Sequence record: PV037725.1
DNA length: 64,000 nucleotides
Strand: one strand, 5' to 3'
Below the pieces are notes generated by a model. That model did not search any database. It saw only the letters and a program-made list of their open reading frames with translations, and was not told where the DNA came from. Shown piece by piece: positions 21,911 to 28,359 of this stretch. Position 1 is the stretch's first letter, and every line of letters begins with the position of its first letter. The translations under genes were made by a program, and so were the position numbers.

Positions 21911-21936
21911 AAAAAATCTCAGATTTATATTACTAC
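21911..21936 (+). promoter_or_regulatory. early promoter for chmA
   Basis: AAAAAATCTCAGATTTATATTACTA containing the phiKZ early consensus TATATTAC; near-identical to 34765. Confidence 0.85.
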
Positions 21937-22006
21937 TGTGAATCTCAGTACAAGGTTCACTTGCATCAACTTGATCAAGCACTAAAAACACCTAAAGGAA
22001 AGAATC

Positions 22007-23905
22007 ATGATTCGTGATACCGCTACCAACACCGCAACTTCTGCACCACAGCAAGCTGTACAGAAACAAGCACCAATTCAAGAAGCAATCCAGGTACCTC
22101 AAATGCAAAACACCCAAACGCAACAAGCCCCATCGTACGCTGGTACTGGTGGCATCAACTCCCAATTCGCCCGTTCGGGTAATGTACAAGGTGGCGATGC
22201 TCGTGCAAGCGAAGCTCTGACCATCTTCACCCGACTGAAAGATCAAGCTGTTGCTCAACAAGATCTGGTCGACGACTTCAGCATCCTGCGTTTCGACCGT
22301 GACCAACATCAGGTAGGTTGGTCTGCTCTGGTAATCGCCAAACAGATCTCTCTGAACGGCCAACCAGTTATCGCAGTTCGTCCTCTGATCCTGCCTAACA
22401 ACTCGATCGAATTGCCAAAGCGCAAAACCTCGATCCAGAACGGCATGCAGACCGACATCATCGAATCCGACATCGACGTTGGTACCGTGTTCTCTGCACA
22501 GTACTTCAGCCGTCTGTCCACCTACGTTCAGAACACTCTGGGTAAGCCTGGTGCTAAAGTAGTACTGGCTGGTGCATTCCCGATCCCTGCTGATCTGGTT
22601 CTGAAAGATGCTGAACTGCAACTGCGTAACCTGCTGATCAAATCGGTTAACGCCGCTGACGACATCCTGGCTCTGCACTCCGGTGAGCGTCCTTTCACCA
22701 TCGCTGGTCTGAAAGGTCAGCAAGGTGAGACTCTGGCTGCCAAGATCGAAGTCCGTCAACAGCCGATCCACGACACCGTTGGTAACCCAATCCGTGCCGA
22801 CCTGATCGTAACCACTCAGCGTGTTCGCCGTAACGGTCAACAACAAGAGAACGAGTTCTACGAGACTGATGTCAAGTTGAACCAAGTTGCAATGTTCACT
22901 AACCTGGAGCGTACTCCTCAGGCTCAGGCTCAGCAACTGTTCCCGAACCAACAGGTTACTCAGGCTCCAGCTCCTTGGATTGCCGCTGTAGTAATCACCG
23001 ACGTTCGTAACGCTGAAGGCATTCAGGCTAACACTCCAGAAATGTACTGGTTCAGCCTGTCCAACGCCTACCGTTCGACCAACGGTCACGCTTGGGCTCG
23101 TCCATTCCTGCCAATGACTGGTGTCGCTAAAGACATGAAAGACATCGGTGCTCTGGGTTGGATGTCCGCTCTGCGTAACCGCATCGACACCAAAGCAGCT
23201 TCGTTCGACGACGCTCAATTCGGTCAACTGATGCTGAGTCAGGTTCAACCTAACCCAGTGTTCCAGATCGACCTGAACCGTCTGGGCGAAACCGCTGTAA
23301 TGGATGGTCTGCTGCTGGACGCTGCTGGTGGTCCAAACGCTCAGAAGGCTGCTGCTACCGCAGTACGTCAGATCAACAACCTCGGCGGTGGCGGTTTCGA
23401 GAAGTACTTCGACTACACCACTCAGCCAATCCTGGAACGTACCGGTCAATCGATCGATCTGGGTAACTGGTTCGATGGTGATGAGAAACGTGACCGTCGT
23501 GACCTCGACAACCTGGCTGCTCTGAACGCTGCCGAAGGTAACGAGAACGAGTTCTGGGGCTACTACGGTGCTCAGCTGAACCCAGGTCTGCATCCAGATC
23601 TGCGTAACCGTCAGTCGCGTAACTACGATCGTCAATACCTGGGTAGCACTGTTACCTACACCGGTAAAGCCGAACGTTGCACCTTCAACGCTAAGTTCAT
23701 CGAAGCGCTGGATCGTTACCTGTCGGACGCTGGTCTGCAAATCACCATGGACAACACTTCGGTGCTGAACAGCGGTCAACGCTTCACCGGTAACTCGGTG
23801 ATCGGTAACCAAATGGTTGGTGGTCAGGCTCAGGTTCACTCGGCTTACGCTGGTCAGTCTGGCTTCCAGTACCAGCAACCAACTGGTCCATCGGCTTTCT
23901 ACTAA
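22007..23905 (+). CDS. chmA: chimallin, phage nuclear shell protein (ChmA/PhuN)
   Basis: 632 aa, very similar to recalled 201phi2-1 gp105 (MIRDTATN...YAGTGGINSQF...GPSAFY); extreme codon bias; directly upstream of nvRNAP beta'. Confidence 0.95.
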   Translation: MIRDTATNTATSAPQQAVQKQAPIQEAIQVPQMQNTQTQQAPSYAGTGGINSQFARSGNVQGGDARASEALTIFTRLKDQAVAQQDLVDDFSILRFDRDQHQVGWSALVIAKQISLNGQPVIAVRPLILPNNSIELPKRKTSIQNGMQTDIIESDIDVGTVFSAQYFSRLSTYVQNTLGKPGAKVVLAGAFPIPADLVLKDAELQLRNLLIKSVNAADDILALHSGERPFTIAGLKGQQGETLAAKIEVRQQPIHDTVGNPIRADLIVTTQRVRRNGQQQENEFYETDVKLNQVAMFTNLERTPQAQAQQLFPNQQVTQAPAPWIAAVVITDVRNAEGIQANTPEMYWFSLSNAYRSTNGHAWARPFLPMTGVAKDMKDIGALGWMSALRNRIDTKAASFDDAQFGQLMLSQVQPNPVFQIDLNRLGETAVMDGLLLDAAGGPNAQKAAATAVRQINNLGGGGFEKYFDYTTQPILERTGQSIDLGNWFDGDEKRDRRDLDNLAALNAAEGNENEFWGYYGAQLNPGLHPDLRNRQSRNYDRQYLGSTVTYTGKAERCTFNAKFIEALDRYLSDAGLQITMDNTSVLNSGQRFTGNSVIGNQMVGGQAQVHSAYAGQSGFQYQQPTGPSAFY

Positions 23906-24099
23906 GTCGTAAGGACTCACCAGAAGAACCAACGTAGGTACCGCCTAAATGCTGGACTAAAAGGTACTTACGTTGTAACCCTCGTTGTGGATAGGTTTCT
24001 ATTCATACGAGCCTGGTGACTAAGCTAGCTGGATGACGGCTCAACCTGCTCAATGGTGGGATCATTCAATACCCCCAGTTAACTCTGGACCGAATAAGT
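23906..24099 (+). ncRNA. candidate structured RNA / structured 3' UTR of chmA
   Basis: No plus-strand ORF; nested helices 23917-23923/24013-24019, 23930-23942/23963-23975, 23981-23994/23999-24011. Confidence 0.45.
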
Positions 24100-24139
24100 G
24101 GGCTACTCCTTCGGGAGTAGCTCATCTATTCCTTTTTTT
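24100..24139 (+). terminator. terminator of the chmA transcript
   Basis: GGGCTACTCC-TTCG-GGAGTAGCTC then CCTTTTTTTG. Confidence 0.85.
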
Positions 24140-24161
24140 GTAATTACCGAAAGGTGTTTAA

Positions 24162-24494
24162 ATGCAAGCCGAAACTCGTGAATTGATGTGGGCAATGAAT
24201 CGTTCGATTGGTGAAACCGTACGTGCTACTGGTGATACCTCCGTAATCAAAGATCAGTGCATTGGTATTCAAGAGGGTGATCAAGAATTCAAAGAAGAAC
24301 GAGATAATACACTTTACAACATGGGTGTTAAAGATGGTATCGCTCGTTTTGTAGACCATATTCACGATGCAGGTTATGTCATCCATGATCCTAATGGGGT
24401 TGTCATCAAACCACATCATCCTGAACACGCTGAGCAAGCAGAGACATTCTCTGAAACCTTCTGGGGTTCCTATTGGGTTAAAGTAAGCAACTGA
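24162..24494 (+). CDS. hypothetical protein
   Basis: 110 aa ORF, SD AAGGTG. Confidence 0.75.
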   Translation: MQAETRELMWAMNRSIGETVRATGDTSVIKDQCIGIQEGDQEFKEERDNTLYNMGVKDGIARFVDHIHDAGYVIHDPNGVVIKPHHPEHAEQAETFSETFWGSYWVKVSN

Positions 24495-24586
24495 GTGGGG
24501 TGAGTATGAAACTCATACACTGGACATGTCGTCGTTGTGGTATGGCAAAATGTCTTTGCATCAAATTGAGTAAGTGAGGTAGTTAC

Positions 24587-26050
24587 ATGGGTCTATATTT
24601 GTCCGTAGTCGACCTGGACGAAGTACACGACAACTTTAAAGGTAAGATGGTTTATGCTAACGACTTCAACACAGGTACAGTTGAGGGTAAGGACGCATTC
24701 CATCGACACTTCTATTCTCACTATAAAGACTCGGAAGCCGTAGAGAACTCTGCGAGCTGTGACTGTGAGTTTCTAGATGAGGCTCACTTCCTTGATGTGA
24801 TCTGTGAAAACTGCGGTACTCCCGTAGTATCCACCAGCAACCGACCAATCGTACCATCCATGTGGATTCGTGCACCAGAGGGTGTAGATCGTTTGATCTC
24901 TCCACAACTCTGGATTATGTTGTCTAACTATCTCACGATGAAAGAGTTCGACTTCCTCGAATATCTGACTAACACGAGTTATAGTTACGATGATGCATCT
25001 ATTACGTCTAAAGAAACTCGACGGAAGCTGGACAAGTTGTTGGTTAAAGGTTTCCCACGTGGGTTGAATAACTTCACTCGGAACTTTGATGAGATCTTCC
25101 AGTTCTTGCTGGATGCTAACATCATCCACAACAACAAAGGTGAGATGAATGCGTTCATCACAGCCAACAAGCACAAGATGTTCCCACGGTATATCCCGAT
25201 TCCATCGAAGCTTTGTTTCGTAGCTGAATCGACTACCTCTGGTAACTATCTGGATGAACCAATTGGACCAGCTATCGAAGCCGTACTGACCTTCTGTAGT
25301 ATTGGCAGTAGTCCGATTCCCATTAAGCCCCAAACCGTCCAGAACCGCGTTGCAGAGTCACTGAAGAACCTTGCGGTGTATCACAAGAACCTCGCTAAGA
25401 CTCGTGTAGCTCAAAAGCCTGGTCTGGTACGTCGTCACGTATTGGGTGGCCGTCTCAACTTTACTGGTCGTGGCGTAATTACCTCTATCAGTGATCCGCA
25501 TGATTACGATGAACTCCACGTAAGTTGGGGCATCATGTGTCAGCTGATGAAATATCAGTTGGTTAACAAACTCAAGCGTAAGAAGCGTTGGACATCCCGT
25601 AAGTGTACCCAACACATCTATGAACACACCTTGCAATACTGTCCGATCCTGAATGAGTGTTTCCTAGAACTCATCGCAGAATCTAAGTATAAAGGTATCG
25701 GTGTTACATTCCACCGAAACCCGACGTTGCAGCGTGGTTCTACTCAGCGGTTCTTCATCACCAAGGTTAAGACTGACCTGCGTGATAACTCCATCAGTAT
25801 GTCGGTATTGTGTCTTAAGGCACCTAACGCCGACTTTGACGGCGACCAACTGAACATGACCCTGTTGCCGGATAACTATCTGGTTGACGCGTGTGAGCGT
25901 ATTGCACCACACACCTGGGTACACTCGACTGATGATCCACATCAACTGTCTGGTAACCTTGAACTGCAAGGTCCGGTCGTAGAAACGGTAGTTAACTATG
26001 GGCATGAAGAATATCTTCCAACGCTGGAAGAGTGGCTTGCTGGGGTATAG
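24587..26050 (+). CDS. non-virion RNA polymerase beta'-like subunit with the catalytic motif (phiKZ gp55-like), uninterrupted
   Basis: NADFDGD; Zn-finger CDC...CENC; GGRLNFTGRGVI; HRNPTL. Confidence 0.93.
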   Translation: MGLYLSVVDLDEVHDNFKGKMVYANDFNTGTVEGKDAFHRHFYSHYKDSEAVENSASCDCEFLDEAHFLDVICENCGTPVVSTSNRPIVPSMWIRAPEGVDRLISPQLWIMLSNYLTMKEFDFLEYLTNTSYSYDDASITSKETRRKLDKLLVKGFPRGLNNFTRNFDEIFQFLLDANIIHNNKGEMNAFITANKHKMFPRYIPIPSKLCFVAESTTSGNYLDEPIGPAIEAVLTFCSIGSSPIPIKPQTVQNRVAESLKNLAVYHKNLAKTRVAQKPGLVRRHVLGGRLNFTGRGVITSISDPHDYDELHVSWGIMCQLMKYQLVNKLKRKKRWTSRKCTQHIYEHTLQYCPILNECFLELIAESKYKGIGVTFHRNPTLQRGSTQRFFITKVKTDLRDNSISMSVLCLKAPNADFDGDQLNMTLLPDNYLVDACERIAPHTWVHSTDDPHQLSGNLELQGPVVETVVNYGHEEYLPTLEEWLAGV

Positions 26051-28340: not shown

Positions 28341-28359
28341 ATTTGAGATCTATATCACT
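28339..28359 (+). promoter_or_regulatory. early-type promoter variant
   Basis: AAATTTGAGATCTATATCACT. Confidence 0.5.

What the first reader, a model, noticed from the sequence alone, without database searches (positions are those of the whole stretch)
23906..24139. Multi-branch structured RNA between the chimallin stop codon and its terminator
About 190 nt of non-coding sequence in an otherwise tightly packed genome. It folds into an enclosing helix TCACCAG/CTGGTGA (23917-23923 with 24013-24019), a 13-bp stem CAACGTAGGTACC/GGTACTTACGTTG (one G-U), and a 13-bp bulged stem CTCGT-GTGGATAG/CTATTCAT-ACGAG. Small hairpins follow (24027-24041 and CCAG/CTGG near 24075-24088). The G-U pairs argue for RNA rather than DNA structure. 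Inference: a 3' UTR element on a very highly expressed early mRNA (stability, export through the nuclear shell or EPI vesicle, ChmC binding, localized shell translation) or a processed sRNA.
Basis: partly seen in the sequence, partly recalled or inferred. Interest (0 to 1): 0.7.

Follow-up and report, generated by a model that had tools for sequence, protein, structure and literature searches.

The report
Conserved folded RNA after chimallin gene
The 230 bases between the nuclear-shell (chimallin) gene of Pseudomonas jumbo phage Viktualia and its terminator encode a real, evolutionarily conserved folded RNA built from several modules, including a three-way junction that is in no RNA database searched; its job is still unknown.

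Summary
The window is Pseudomonas phage Viktualia. chmA (22007-23905) is followed by 256 non-coding bases.

It folds far better than shuffles (z -5.9). Single-sequence folding of 7 of 9 related sequences gives the same junction.

Across 13 phages (ChmA 52-90% identical), 31 of 33 base pairs show changes on both sides. Cells are 93% paired, against 32-40% when partners are slid. Every phage has a different P2 stem but nearly the same 18-20 nt loop (RCCUAAnUnnUGGnUnAAA). G-U pairs outnumber A-C mismatches 31:8, so the sense-strand RNA is what folds.

Two further covarying modules follow (B, 24024-24068; C, 24075-24088). Then comes a terminator whose core motif recurs elsewhere in the genome. Modules A-C are single-copy per genome, always between chmA and that terminator. 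They are mosaic: some relatives lack them.

There is no Rfam match and no published description. The only hint is eCLIP coverage peaks in the same gap of PhiPA3. This scan already noted a mosaic structured chmA 3' UTR in PhiPA3, but from a different sequence family.

Function is inferred only. The most likely reading is a factor-binding 3' UTR domain or stable 3'-derived RNA. Control of read-through into the downstream non-virion RNA polymerase (nvRNAP) gene is the main rival.

The parts
21921..21933 (+). Early (virion-RNAP type) promoter motif AGATTTATATTAC, 74 nt upstream of the chmA ATG. Next + strand copies are at 28346 (2 mismatches) and 34775.
   Evidence: conserved in the chmA 5' regions of relatives (printout)
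22007..23905 (+). chmA (chimallin / nuclear shell protein), 632 aa
   Evidence: Pfam PF25677, E 2.8e-232; annotated nuclear shell protein in PV037725.1
23917..24019 (+). Module A: three-way junction. P1 is 23917-23923 with 24013-24019. J1/2 is 23924-23929. P2 is 23930-23942 with 23963-23975. J2/3 is 23976-23980. P3 is 23981-24011. J3/1 is 24012.
   Evidence: MFE z -5.86; model R1 hits in 13 phages; 31 of 33 pairs covary; same fold from single sequences; one copy per genome
23943..23962 (+). Conserved P2 loop (consensus RCCUAAnUnnUGGnUnAAA). A possible 2-bp CC/GG closure leaves an 8-nt apical loop and an A-rich 3' bulge.
   Evidence: near-identical loop on 12 different stems; Phabio has GC/GC in place of CC/GG
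24024..24068 (+). Module B: invariant GCUAG(C) at 24024-24029. Helix B1 is 24030-24036 with 24062-24068. An asymmetric internal loop has CGGCUnAA (24037-24044) opposite one A (24061). Hairpin B2 is 24045-24050 with 24055-24060.
   Evidence: model R2: 8 strong hits; covariation in B1 and B2; single copy in the genome
24075..24088 (+). Module C: hairpin CCAG-UUAACU-CUGG
   Evidence: 100% of cells paired; CCAG/CUGG becomes CCGA/UCGG, CUGG/CCAG or CUGGC/GCCAG in relatives
24092..24139 (+). Module D: long-stem intrinsic terminator. The core GGGCUACUCC-UUCG-GGAGUAGCUC (24100-24123) is extended by 24092-24099 pairing with 24124-24131. The U7 run is 24133-24139.
   Evidence: The core CTCCTTCGGGAG occurs 4 times in the window.
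24033..24143 (+). GenBank CDS0299 (36 aa); judged not to be a gene
   Evidence: It overlaps modules B-D and the terminator hairpin. No PHROG family. The reading frame is not kept in relatives. Near-identical relatives carry frame-breaking indels at 24042, 24050 and 24052.
24162..24494 (+). Downstream 110-aa ORF of unknown function. It does not co-vary in presence with the RNA modules.
   Evidence: present in L111, L112 and L116, which lack modules A and B; replaced by 29 nt in close relatives
24587..26050 (+). Non-virion RNA polymerase (nvRNAP) beta'-like subunit gene (201phi2-1 gp107 / phiKZ gp55 homolog)
   Evidence: Pfam RNA_pol_Rpb1_2; annotation

Best explanation
The stretch is the folded 3' end of the chmA messenger RNA. 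Shown: transcription can start at the early promoter motif at 21921. The RNA after the stop codon folds into a three-way junction (A), a helix/internal-loop/hairpin module (B) and a small hairpin (C), directly before a long-stem intrinsic terminator (D). Helices are kept by compensatory changes, while the P2 loop, the junction strands (AAAGACC, UAAAA) and the B internal loop (CGGCUnAA) are kept in sequence. Inferred: these conserved unpaired surfaces are a specific docking site for a trans-acting factor, most plausibly an RNA-binding protein of the phage or host. That factor would set the fate of the chmA transcript (stability, handling or export, translation). Because the modules sit next to the terminator, they probably also persist as a stable 3'-derived small RNA after the coding part decays.
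For: Structure: z -5.0 and -5.9. The same 3WJ comes from single-sequence folds of 7 of 9 homologs besides the window; L108 keeps P1 and P2, Phabio keeps P1, P2 and the P3 tip, and L113 differs in P2. Covariation in A: 92.8% of cells paired against 68.5% shuffled and 32-40% slid, with 31 of 33 pairs changed on both sides. Covariation in B and C: 90.2% against 71.6% and 19-40%, with 13 of 17 pairs changed on both sides. A structure-blind MAFFT alignment with RNAalifold already recovers P1 and P3 with covariation. Sense-strand RNA: G-U to A-C is 31:8 and 18:5. In 95-99% identical relatives, 23966 A>G and 23970 A>G turn U-A into U-G within P2. Specific recognition surface: loop sequence is conserved on 12 different stems. 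Locus specificity: one copy per genome, always after chmA, in five whole genomes. Outside support: eCLIP coverage peaks between chmA and gp54 in PhiPA3, read by the authors as small regulatory RNAs bound by ChmC (PMC11077065).
Against: There are no transcript-end or abundance data for Viktualia or 201phi2-1; the public runs hold only assembled contigs of relatives. No binding partner is identified. Modules are missing in some relatives (L111, L112 and L116 have little more than the terminator), so they are dispensable or replaceable. In L113 and L114 an extra 75-78 aa ORF sits between chmA and the modules, so the link is to the terminator-proximal position rather than strictly to chmA. The PhiPA3 eCLIP evidence concerns a different sequence family.
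Confidence: 0.45

Rival explanations
1. Read-through (attenuation or antitermination) control. The modules act in cis on the transcribing phage RNA polymerase, or bind a factor that does. They would set how much transcription passes the terminator into the nvRNAP beta' gene, fixing the ratio of abundant ChmA to scarce polymerase subunit.
For: No early promoter motif lies between 21933 and 28346 on the + strand. In 201phi2-1, ONT-cappable-seq found no promoter for gp107, and the nearest predicted early promoter lies about 3 kb upstream, a distance that matches the start of chmA (PMC11512511). In L004, L049, L115 and L129 the RNAP gene starts about 30 nt after the U-run, leaving no room for a promoter. 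The polymerase mRNA must therefore cross this terminator. A structured conserved RNA followed by a terminator and then a gene is the classical leader layout. The 201phi2-1 authors also infer antitermination in this phage.
Against: No alternative antiterminator pairing with the terminator arm appears in the MFE or centroid; all modules fold independently beside an intact terminator. Relatives without modules keep the same terminator and gene order. The downstream gene varies (a 105-122 aa ORF, a 186-aa ORF, or RNAP directly). No similarity to known antitermination RNAs was found in Rfam.
Confidence: 0.2
2. Trans-acting base-pairing sRNA. A 3'UTR-derived or internally promoted small RNA uses the conserved single-stranded P2 loop as a seed against a host or phage mRNA.
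For: The loop is a conserved, predicted-unpaired 18-20 nt stretch. A-rich linkers plus a terminator U-tail resemble Hfq-type sRNAs (my knowledge). Phage 3'UTR-derived ncRNAs are documented in PAK_P3 (PMC10914365). The PhiPA3 peaks were interpreted as sRNAs.
Against: Sites complementary to the loop are not enriched in four whole phage genomes: counts equal the reversed-pattern control. Loop pairing with the chmA 5' UTR is not above shuffles in 9 phages. The elaborate covarying junction with conserved junction strands is unusual for a simple seed-bearing sRNA. Host targets were not tested.
Confidence: 0.15
3. Passive 3' stabiliser only: stacked hairpins that slow 3'-to-5' exonucleases on a very abundant early mRNA, with no specific partner.
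For: The position is directly upstream of the terminator, the helices are very stable, and the element is dispensable in some relatives.
Against: It does not explain why loop and junction sequences are conserved while stems drift. It does not explain the low-stability but covarying module B. The long-stem terminator alone should already protect the 3' end.
Confidence: 0.1
4. A tertiary-folded catalytic or ligand-sensing RNA: a new self-cleaving ribozyme that releases the 3' fragment, or an aptamer.
For: A three-way junction with highly conserved junction nucleotides, a conserved tetraloop (GUnU) in P3 and an A-rich bulge in P2 suggests tertiary contacts.
Against: No match to any Rfam ribozyme or riboswitch model. 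No alternative expression-platform pairing. L108 lacks P3, and 201phi2-1, L110 and L115 keep only P2. A catalytic core would not tolerate such losses.
Confidence: 0.05

Closest known systems
   Same: Same genomic slot (chmA stop to nvRNAP beta' gene). A long ORF-free stretch of 515 nt with a stable fold (z -3.1), mosaic modules and a CUCCUUCGGGAG-type terminator.
   Different: A different sequence family: models R1 and R2 find nothing in PhiPA3, phiKZ-type KTN4, PS119XW or Psa21. PhiPA3 and phiKZ share their own motifs.
sRNAs of 201phi2-1 and phiKZ found by ONT-cappable-seq (Poppeliers 2024, PMC11512511; Putzeys 2024, PMC10914365), e.g. sRNA005 upstream of the gp277/gp182 tail gene
   Same: Short structured phage RNAs delimited by a conserved terminator and conserved by position across jumbo-phage genera.
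   Different: Most of those (8 of 11, including sRNA005) are 5'UTR premature-termination products. None is described in the text for the chmA 3' region. Table S4, with the three intergenic sRNAs, was not available, so overlap cannot be excluded.
3'UTR-derived ncRNA1 and ncRNA2 of phage PAK_P3
   Same: Abundant processed RNAs derived from the 3' UTR of an upstream phage gene, lacking their own TSS.
   Different: Unrelated phage and sequence; no covariation-supported multi-branch fold reported.
HK022 put RNA (cis-acting processive antitermination RNA; from my knowledge)
   Same: A phage-encoded structured RNA in the nascent transcript upstream of terminators that must be passed to express downstream genes.
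   Different: put is two stem-loops acting on host RNAP. Here the RNA is a 3WJ plus further modules, and the polymerase is a divergent phage multisubunit enzyme. No sequence or model similarity; mechanism untested.
Three-way-junction elements in viral 3' UTRs of eukaryotic viruses (flavivirus xrRNA, Y-shaped 3' CITEs; from my knowledge)
   Same: A conserved 3WJ in the 3' UTR of a viral mRNA acting on RNA stability or translation.
   Different: Analogy only. The hosts lack Xrn1-type and cap-dependent systems, and there is no homology.

Membership tests
Any Rfam 15 family (4227 models, including hammerhead, twister-sister, riboswitches, Rsm and Y RNAs) | Covariance-model match at or near the gathering score | tested here: not met
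   Window 23500-24600 at E<=10 gave only a 20.6-bit sbrA hit on the terminator (gathering score 45). Seven homologous loci gave 0 hits at E<=0.1.
Intrinsic terminator of the repeated Serwervirus/Phikzvirus type | G+C-rich hairpin followed by a U-run; a core shared by many sites in the genome | tested here: met
   12-bp stem plus U7. The core occurs 4 times in the window. The literature reports one terminator motif at 59 sites in 201phi2-1, with long-stem combinations of two motifs. This applies to module D only; the match to the published motifs is my inference.
Structured non-coding RNA under selection | Helices kept by compensatory substitutions across diverged sequences, above controls | tested here: met
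   (0 of 500 shuffles reach the observed values; slid controls 19-40% paired). Searches are independent of the model-fitted alignment.
3'UTR-derived small RNA | A discrete, abundant RNA species sharing the mRNA's terminator, with a processed or own 5' end | not testable with these tools
   The public runs held only assembled contigs of relatives, with no read ends. The 201phi2-1 supplementary tables are not held.
3'UTR-derived small RNA | A conserved single-stranded seed with identifiable complementary targets | tested here: inconclusive
   The seed-like loop is conserved. Complementary sites are not enriched in the phage genomes, and there is no pairing with the chmA 5' UTR. Host targets were not tested.
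Transcription-attenuation leader (riboswitch or protein-controlled) | Mutually exclusive terminator and antiterminator pairings | tested here: not met
   The MFE and centroid keep all modules and the terminator together, and no competing helix with the terminator arm appears.
Transcription-attenuation leader (riboswitch or protein-controlled) | The downstream gene depends on read-through of the terminator | tested here: inconclusive
   No early promoter motif lies between chmA and 28346. There is no room for a promoter in L004, L049, L115 and L129. No promoter was found for 201phi2-1 gp107. Middle and late promoters could not be scanned.
Rsm/Csr-titrating RNA | Several invariant GGA motifs presented in hairpin loops | tested here: not met
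   The P2-loop GGA is GGC in 201phi2-1 and GGU in L110. No RsmY or RsmZ hit in Rfam.
PhiPA3/phiKZ-type chmA 3' UTR RNA | Sequence and structure homology to that region | tested here: not met
   R1 and R2 with filters off give only chance-level hits (E>0.1) in PhiPA3, KTN4, PS119XW and Psa21. The position is the same but the family is different.
Small protein-coding gene (GenBank CDS0299) | An open frame conserved in relatives | tested here: not met
   The frame stops after 3-20 codons or lacks a start codon in relatives. Close relatives carry frameshifting indels. No family hit.

The most novel reading that the evidence does not exclude
The three-way junction with its invariant loop is a dedicated address label on the chmA message. 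A phage factor would recognise it to route or translate this one mRNA at the right place and time, for example handing it over from the early-infection vesicle or locating shell synthesis. Alternatively, it is the RNA half of a polymerase-modifying antitermination system for the phage's own multisubunit RNAP. Either would be a new RNA-based control mechanism in nucleus-forming phages.
Probability: 0.12. Interest if true: 0.85.

Novelty: new variant of a known kind. Interest (0 to 1): 0.6.

Why it matters
ChmA is the defining protein of nucleus-forming jumbo phages and one of the first and most abundant products of infection. How its mRNA is made, handled and balanced against the neighbouring polymerase gene is not understood.

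This work delivers a covariation-supported RNA family with defined helices, a defined conserved loop and natural presence/absence variants. It lies at exactly that locus in the Serwervirus-like clade, which includes the model phage 201phi2-1, and in Phabio.

That turns a vague idea of "RNA peaks after chmA" into precise, testable objects: loop mutants, module deletions and pull-down baits. It also corrects a spurious CDS in the GenBank record.

Tried and rejected
1. Known RNA family: Rfam scans of the window and of seven homologous loci were negative.
2. Dispersed repeat or generic terminator accessory: models R1 and R2 find one copy per genome. Other terminators with the same core lack modules A-C.
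3. Long-range pairing of the P2 loop with the chmA 5' UTR or RBS: not better than shuffled loops in 9 phages.
4. Phage-encoded antisense target of the loop: counts equal the reversed-pattern control in four genomes.
5. Small ORF (CDS0299): rejected.
6. DNA-level or antisense-strand structure: rejected by the G-U/A-C asymmetry and the weaker minus-strand fold.
7. Co-occurrence with the downstream 110-aa ORF as a partner protein: none, because the ORF is present where modules are absent and the reverse.
8. Transcript evidence from public runs: only assembled contigs of relatives, so no ends.
9. A metagenome scan for more chmA loci returned only a contig already held.
10. A scan of viral contigs with the loop pattern gave about 100 hits. 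Apart from the chmA loci of 201phi2-1 and two metagenomic jumbo-phage contigs (G001, G002), they lacked a flanking stem.
11. Unverified lead, from memory only: GGCUCAACCUG in module B of Viktualia and L107 resembles a 16S rRNA segment. It is not conserved in the other phages, so I give it no weight.

Full report
**Identity and setting.** The window is Pseudomonas phage Viktualia (PV037725.1, 322,655 bp, host P. syringae). Window position 1 is record position 124,001. ORF 22007-23905 is chimallin/ChmA (Pfam PF25677, E 2.8e-232). Its nearest named relative is 201phi2-1 gp105 (90% aa identity). After the stop codon come 256 bases without a credible gene. Then follow a 110-aa ORF (24162-24494) and the non-virion RNA polymerase (nvRNAP) beta'-like gene (24587-26050). 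An exact early-promoter motif (AGATTTATATTAC) lies at 21921, 74 nt before the chmA ATG. The next + strand copies are at 28346 (2 mismatches) and 34775.

- The three helices form a three-way junction (3WJ, module A, 23917-24019). On its own it gives z -5.86 on the + strand and -3.54 on the - strand.
- The CCAG/CUGG hairpin (24075-24088) and a long-stem terminator with a U7 run (24092-24139) follow.
- Two corrections. The gap is 256 nt, not about 190.

**Relatives.** ChmA has many uncultured relatives at 64-89% identity. I fetched the chmA 3' regions of 14 of them, plus 201phi2-1, Phabio, PhiPA3, Psa21, KTN4 (phiKZ species), PS119XW, RVTF4 and D6. Reading them side by side shows that the gap is built from separable modules.

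*Module A (3WJ)*
- P1 has 7-11 bp.
- J1/2 is (C)AAAGACC.
- P2 has 9-13 bp. Its sequence differs in every phage, but it carries a nearly constant 18-20 nt loop (RCCUAAnUnnUGGnUnAAA).
- J2/3 is UAAAA/C.
- P3 has a 3-4 bp tip closed by a GUnU tetraloop.
- J3/1 is a single nucleotide.

*Module B.* An invariant GCUAG(C) is followed by helix B1. B1 encloses an asymmetric internal loop (CGGCUnAA opposite one A) and hairpin B2.

*Module C.* A 4-5 bp hairpin.

*Module D.* The terminator. Its extended stem explains the conserved ACCRAAUAR just after module C.

**Covariation.**
- A covariance model of the 3WJ (R1) finds one hit in each of 13 phages, always just after chmA. These include Phabio, whose ChmA is only 52% identical (E 8.5e-5).
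- On that alignment 92.8% of cells are standard pairs, against 68.5% after shuffling partners and 32-40% when partners are slid by 1-3 columns.
- 31 of 33 pairs have changes on both sides, and 0 of 500 shuffles reach any observed measure.
- That alignment was fitted to the model, so I checked two model-independent lines. A plain MAFFT alignment with RNAalifold recovers P1 and P3, with 12 of 18 pairs compensated. Single-sequence folding of ten homologs gives the same three-way junction in the window and 7 others. L108 has P1 and P2 only. Phabio keeps P1, P2 and the P3 tip in a slightly different fold, and L113 departs in P2.
- For 201phi2-1, L110 and L115 only the P2 hairpin is truly homologous. 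Their P1 and P3 columns in the model alignment are forced.
- A second model for modules B and C (R2) gives 8 strong hits. On that alignment 90.2% of cells are paired, against 71.6% shuffled and 19-40% slid, with 13 of 17 pairs compensated. This holds even though B and C are not thermodynamically unusual (z -0.3).

**Which strand, and RNA or DNA.** G-U pairs outnumber A-C mismatches, which would be G-U on the other strand, by 31:8 and 18:5. Contigs of 95-99% identical relatives in public runs carry 23966 A>G and 23970 A>G. Both turn U-A into U-G inside P2. The sense-strand RNA is therefore what is selected.

**Not a gene, not a repeat, not a known family.**
- GenBank's 36-aa CDS0299 (24033-24143) runs through module B, module C and the terminator hairpin. 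It has no family and is not open in relatives. Near-identical relatives break it with indels.
- R1 and R2 each find one significant site per whole genome in Viktualia and 201phi2-1. R1 also finds one site in Phabio and in two complete metagenomic genomes.
- Other terminators with the same CUCCUUCGGGAG core lack modules A-C.
- Rfam 15 has nothing here or in seven homologous loci.

**Distribution.**
- Full or variant 3WJ: Viktualia, L004, L049, L106, L107, L109, L117, L113 (P2 loop replaced) and Phabio.
- P1 and P2 only: L108.
- P2 hairpin only: 201phi2-1, L110, L115.
- Module B: Viktualia, L106, L107, L109, L113, L114, L115, L129. In L049 it lies 5' of the junction.
- Only the terminator, with or without a small hairpin before it: L111, L112, L116.
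- In L113 and L114 an extra 75-78 aa ORF sits between chmA and the modules.
- More distant genera give no model hits. PhiPA3 (515 nt), Psa21 (435), KTN4/phiKZ (394) and PS119XW (391) still have long gaps in the same slot. The first three were folded and are significantly stable (z -3.0 to -3.8). phiKZ and PhiPA3 share their own motifs.
- RVTF4 and D6 have only about 90-100 nt.
The Viktualia modules are a different sequence family.

**Literature.**
- I found no description of this RNA.
- The 201phi2-1 ONT-cappable-seq study reports 11 sRNAs, three of them intergenic. Its text never mentions the gp105 region, and its tables were not available.
- The same study found no promoter for gp107 (nvRNAP beta'). 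It predicted the nearest early promoter about 3 kb upstream, a distance that matches the start of chmA. It also describes repeated long-stem terminators and infers antitermination.
- The phiKZ dRNA-seq and ONT studies do not mention a chmA 3' RNA.

**Mechanism.**
- Shown: a sense-strand, modular, structure-selected RNA lies directly before the terminator. It has conserved unpaired surfaces and is unique to this locus.
- Inferred, as the best reading (0.45): those surfaces dock a specific trans-acting factor that controls the fate of the chmA transcript, and the terminator-proximal modules persist as a stable 3' fragment.
- Main rival (0.2): control of terminator read-through. In L004, L049, L115 and L129 the polymerase gene starts about 30 nt after the U-run, so its mRNA must cross this terminator. 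No early promoter motif intervenes in Viktualia. Against this rival, no antiterminator alternative pairing is visible, and module-less relatives keep the same layout.
- A base-pairing sRNA (0.15) is weakened by the lack of complementary sites in phage genomes and in the chmA 5' UTR. Host targets remain open.
- A purely passive stabiliser (0.1) does not explain the sequence-conserved loops.
- A ribozyme or aptamer (0.05) is hard to square with natural variants that lack P3 or P1.

**Verdict.** The finding is real, specific and undescribed as an RNA family. Its general kind is already hinted at in the field: a structured phage 3' UTR or 3'-derived RNA. Its function is open. Public transcript data could not be brought to bear here, so the decisive steps are experimental or need the published supplementary tables.

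Noticed in passing
window 24033-24143 (+): GenBank CDS0299 (36 aa, hypothetical protein) overlaps modules B-D and the terminator hairpin. It is not conserved as a reading frame and is almost certainly a mis-call.
   Followed up: yes
L107 5040-6893, L109 5102-6899, L108 2622-4491, L112 3416-5470: In several uncultured relatives the nvRNAP beta' gene (487 aa and intact in Viktualia at 24587-26050) is called as a 378-419 aa product. It is followed directly by an HNH/NUMOD endonuclease gene, which suggests a mobile intron-type insertion in the polymerase gene.
   Followed up: no
window 24168-24527: Contigs of 95-99% identical relatives in two public runs replace 358 nt, essentially the whole 110-aa ORF, with 29 unrelated bases. 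That ORF is therefore dispensable among close relatives.
   Followed up: partly
window 21921-22006 and the homologous 5' regions of relatives: The chmA 5' UTR is itself highly conserved across the clade. It contains the early promoter motif, a palindrome AACTTGATCAAG about 35 nt before the ATG, and an identical RBS block CTAAAGGAAAGAATCATG.
   Followed up: partly
L113 3511-3738; L114 4442-4678: A 75-78 aa ORF of unknown function (no PHROG match for the L113 copy, the only one scanned) is inserted between chmA and the RNA modules in two relatives. It is preceded by its own hairpin.
   Followed up: partly
L134 3046-3439 (KTN4/phiKZ) and L119 3259-3773 (PhiPA3): The phiKZ-type and PhiPA3 gaps after chmA share their own conserved blocks: CCUCGGUAGAUAGGG, a covarying hairpin, CCCGAUUCUAAU, and also CUAUCACUACACGAG and CACUUAACC. 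This is a second RNA family in the same slot.
   Followed up: partly
window 21992-23932 (-): A 646-aa open frame runs antisense across the whole of chmA. It is most likely a by-product of chmA codon usage rather than a gene.
   Followed up: no
L002 3874-3893; L110 4414-4434; L118 3399-3420: A further small module, a hairpin GGGAUC-GAAA-GGUCCC right after the chmA stop codon, is shared by 201phi2-1, L110 and Phabio but is absent from Viktualia.
   Followed up: no
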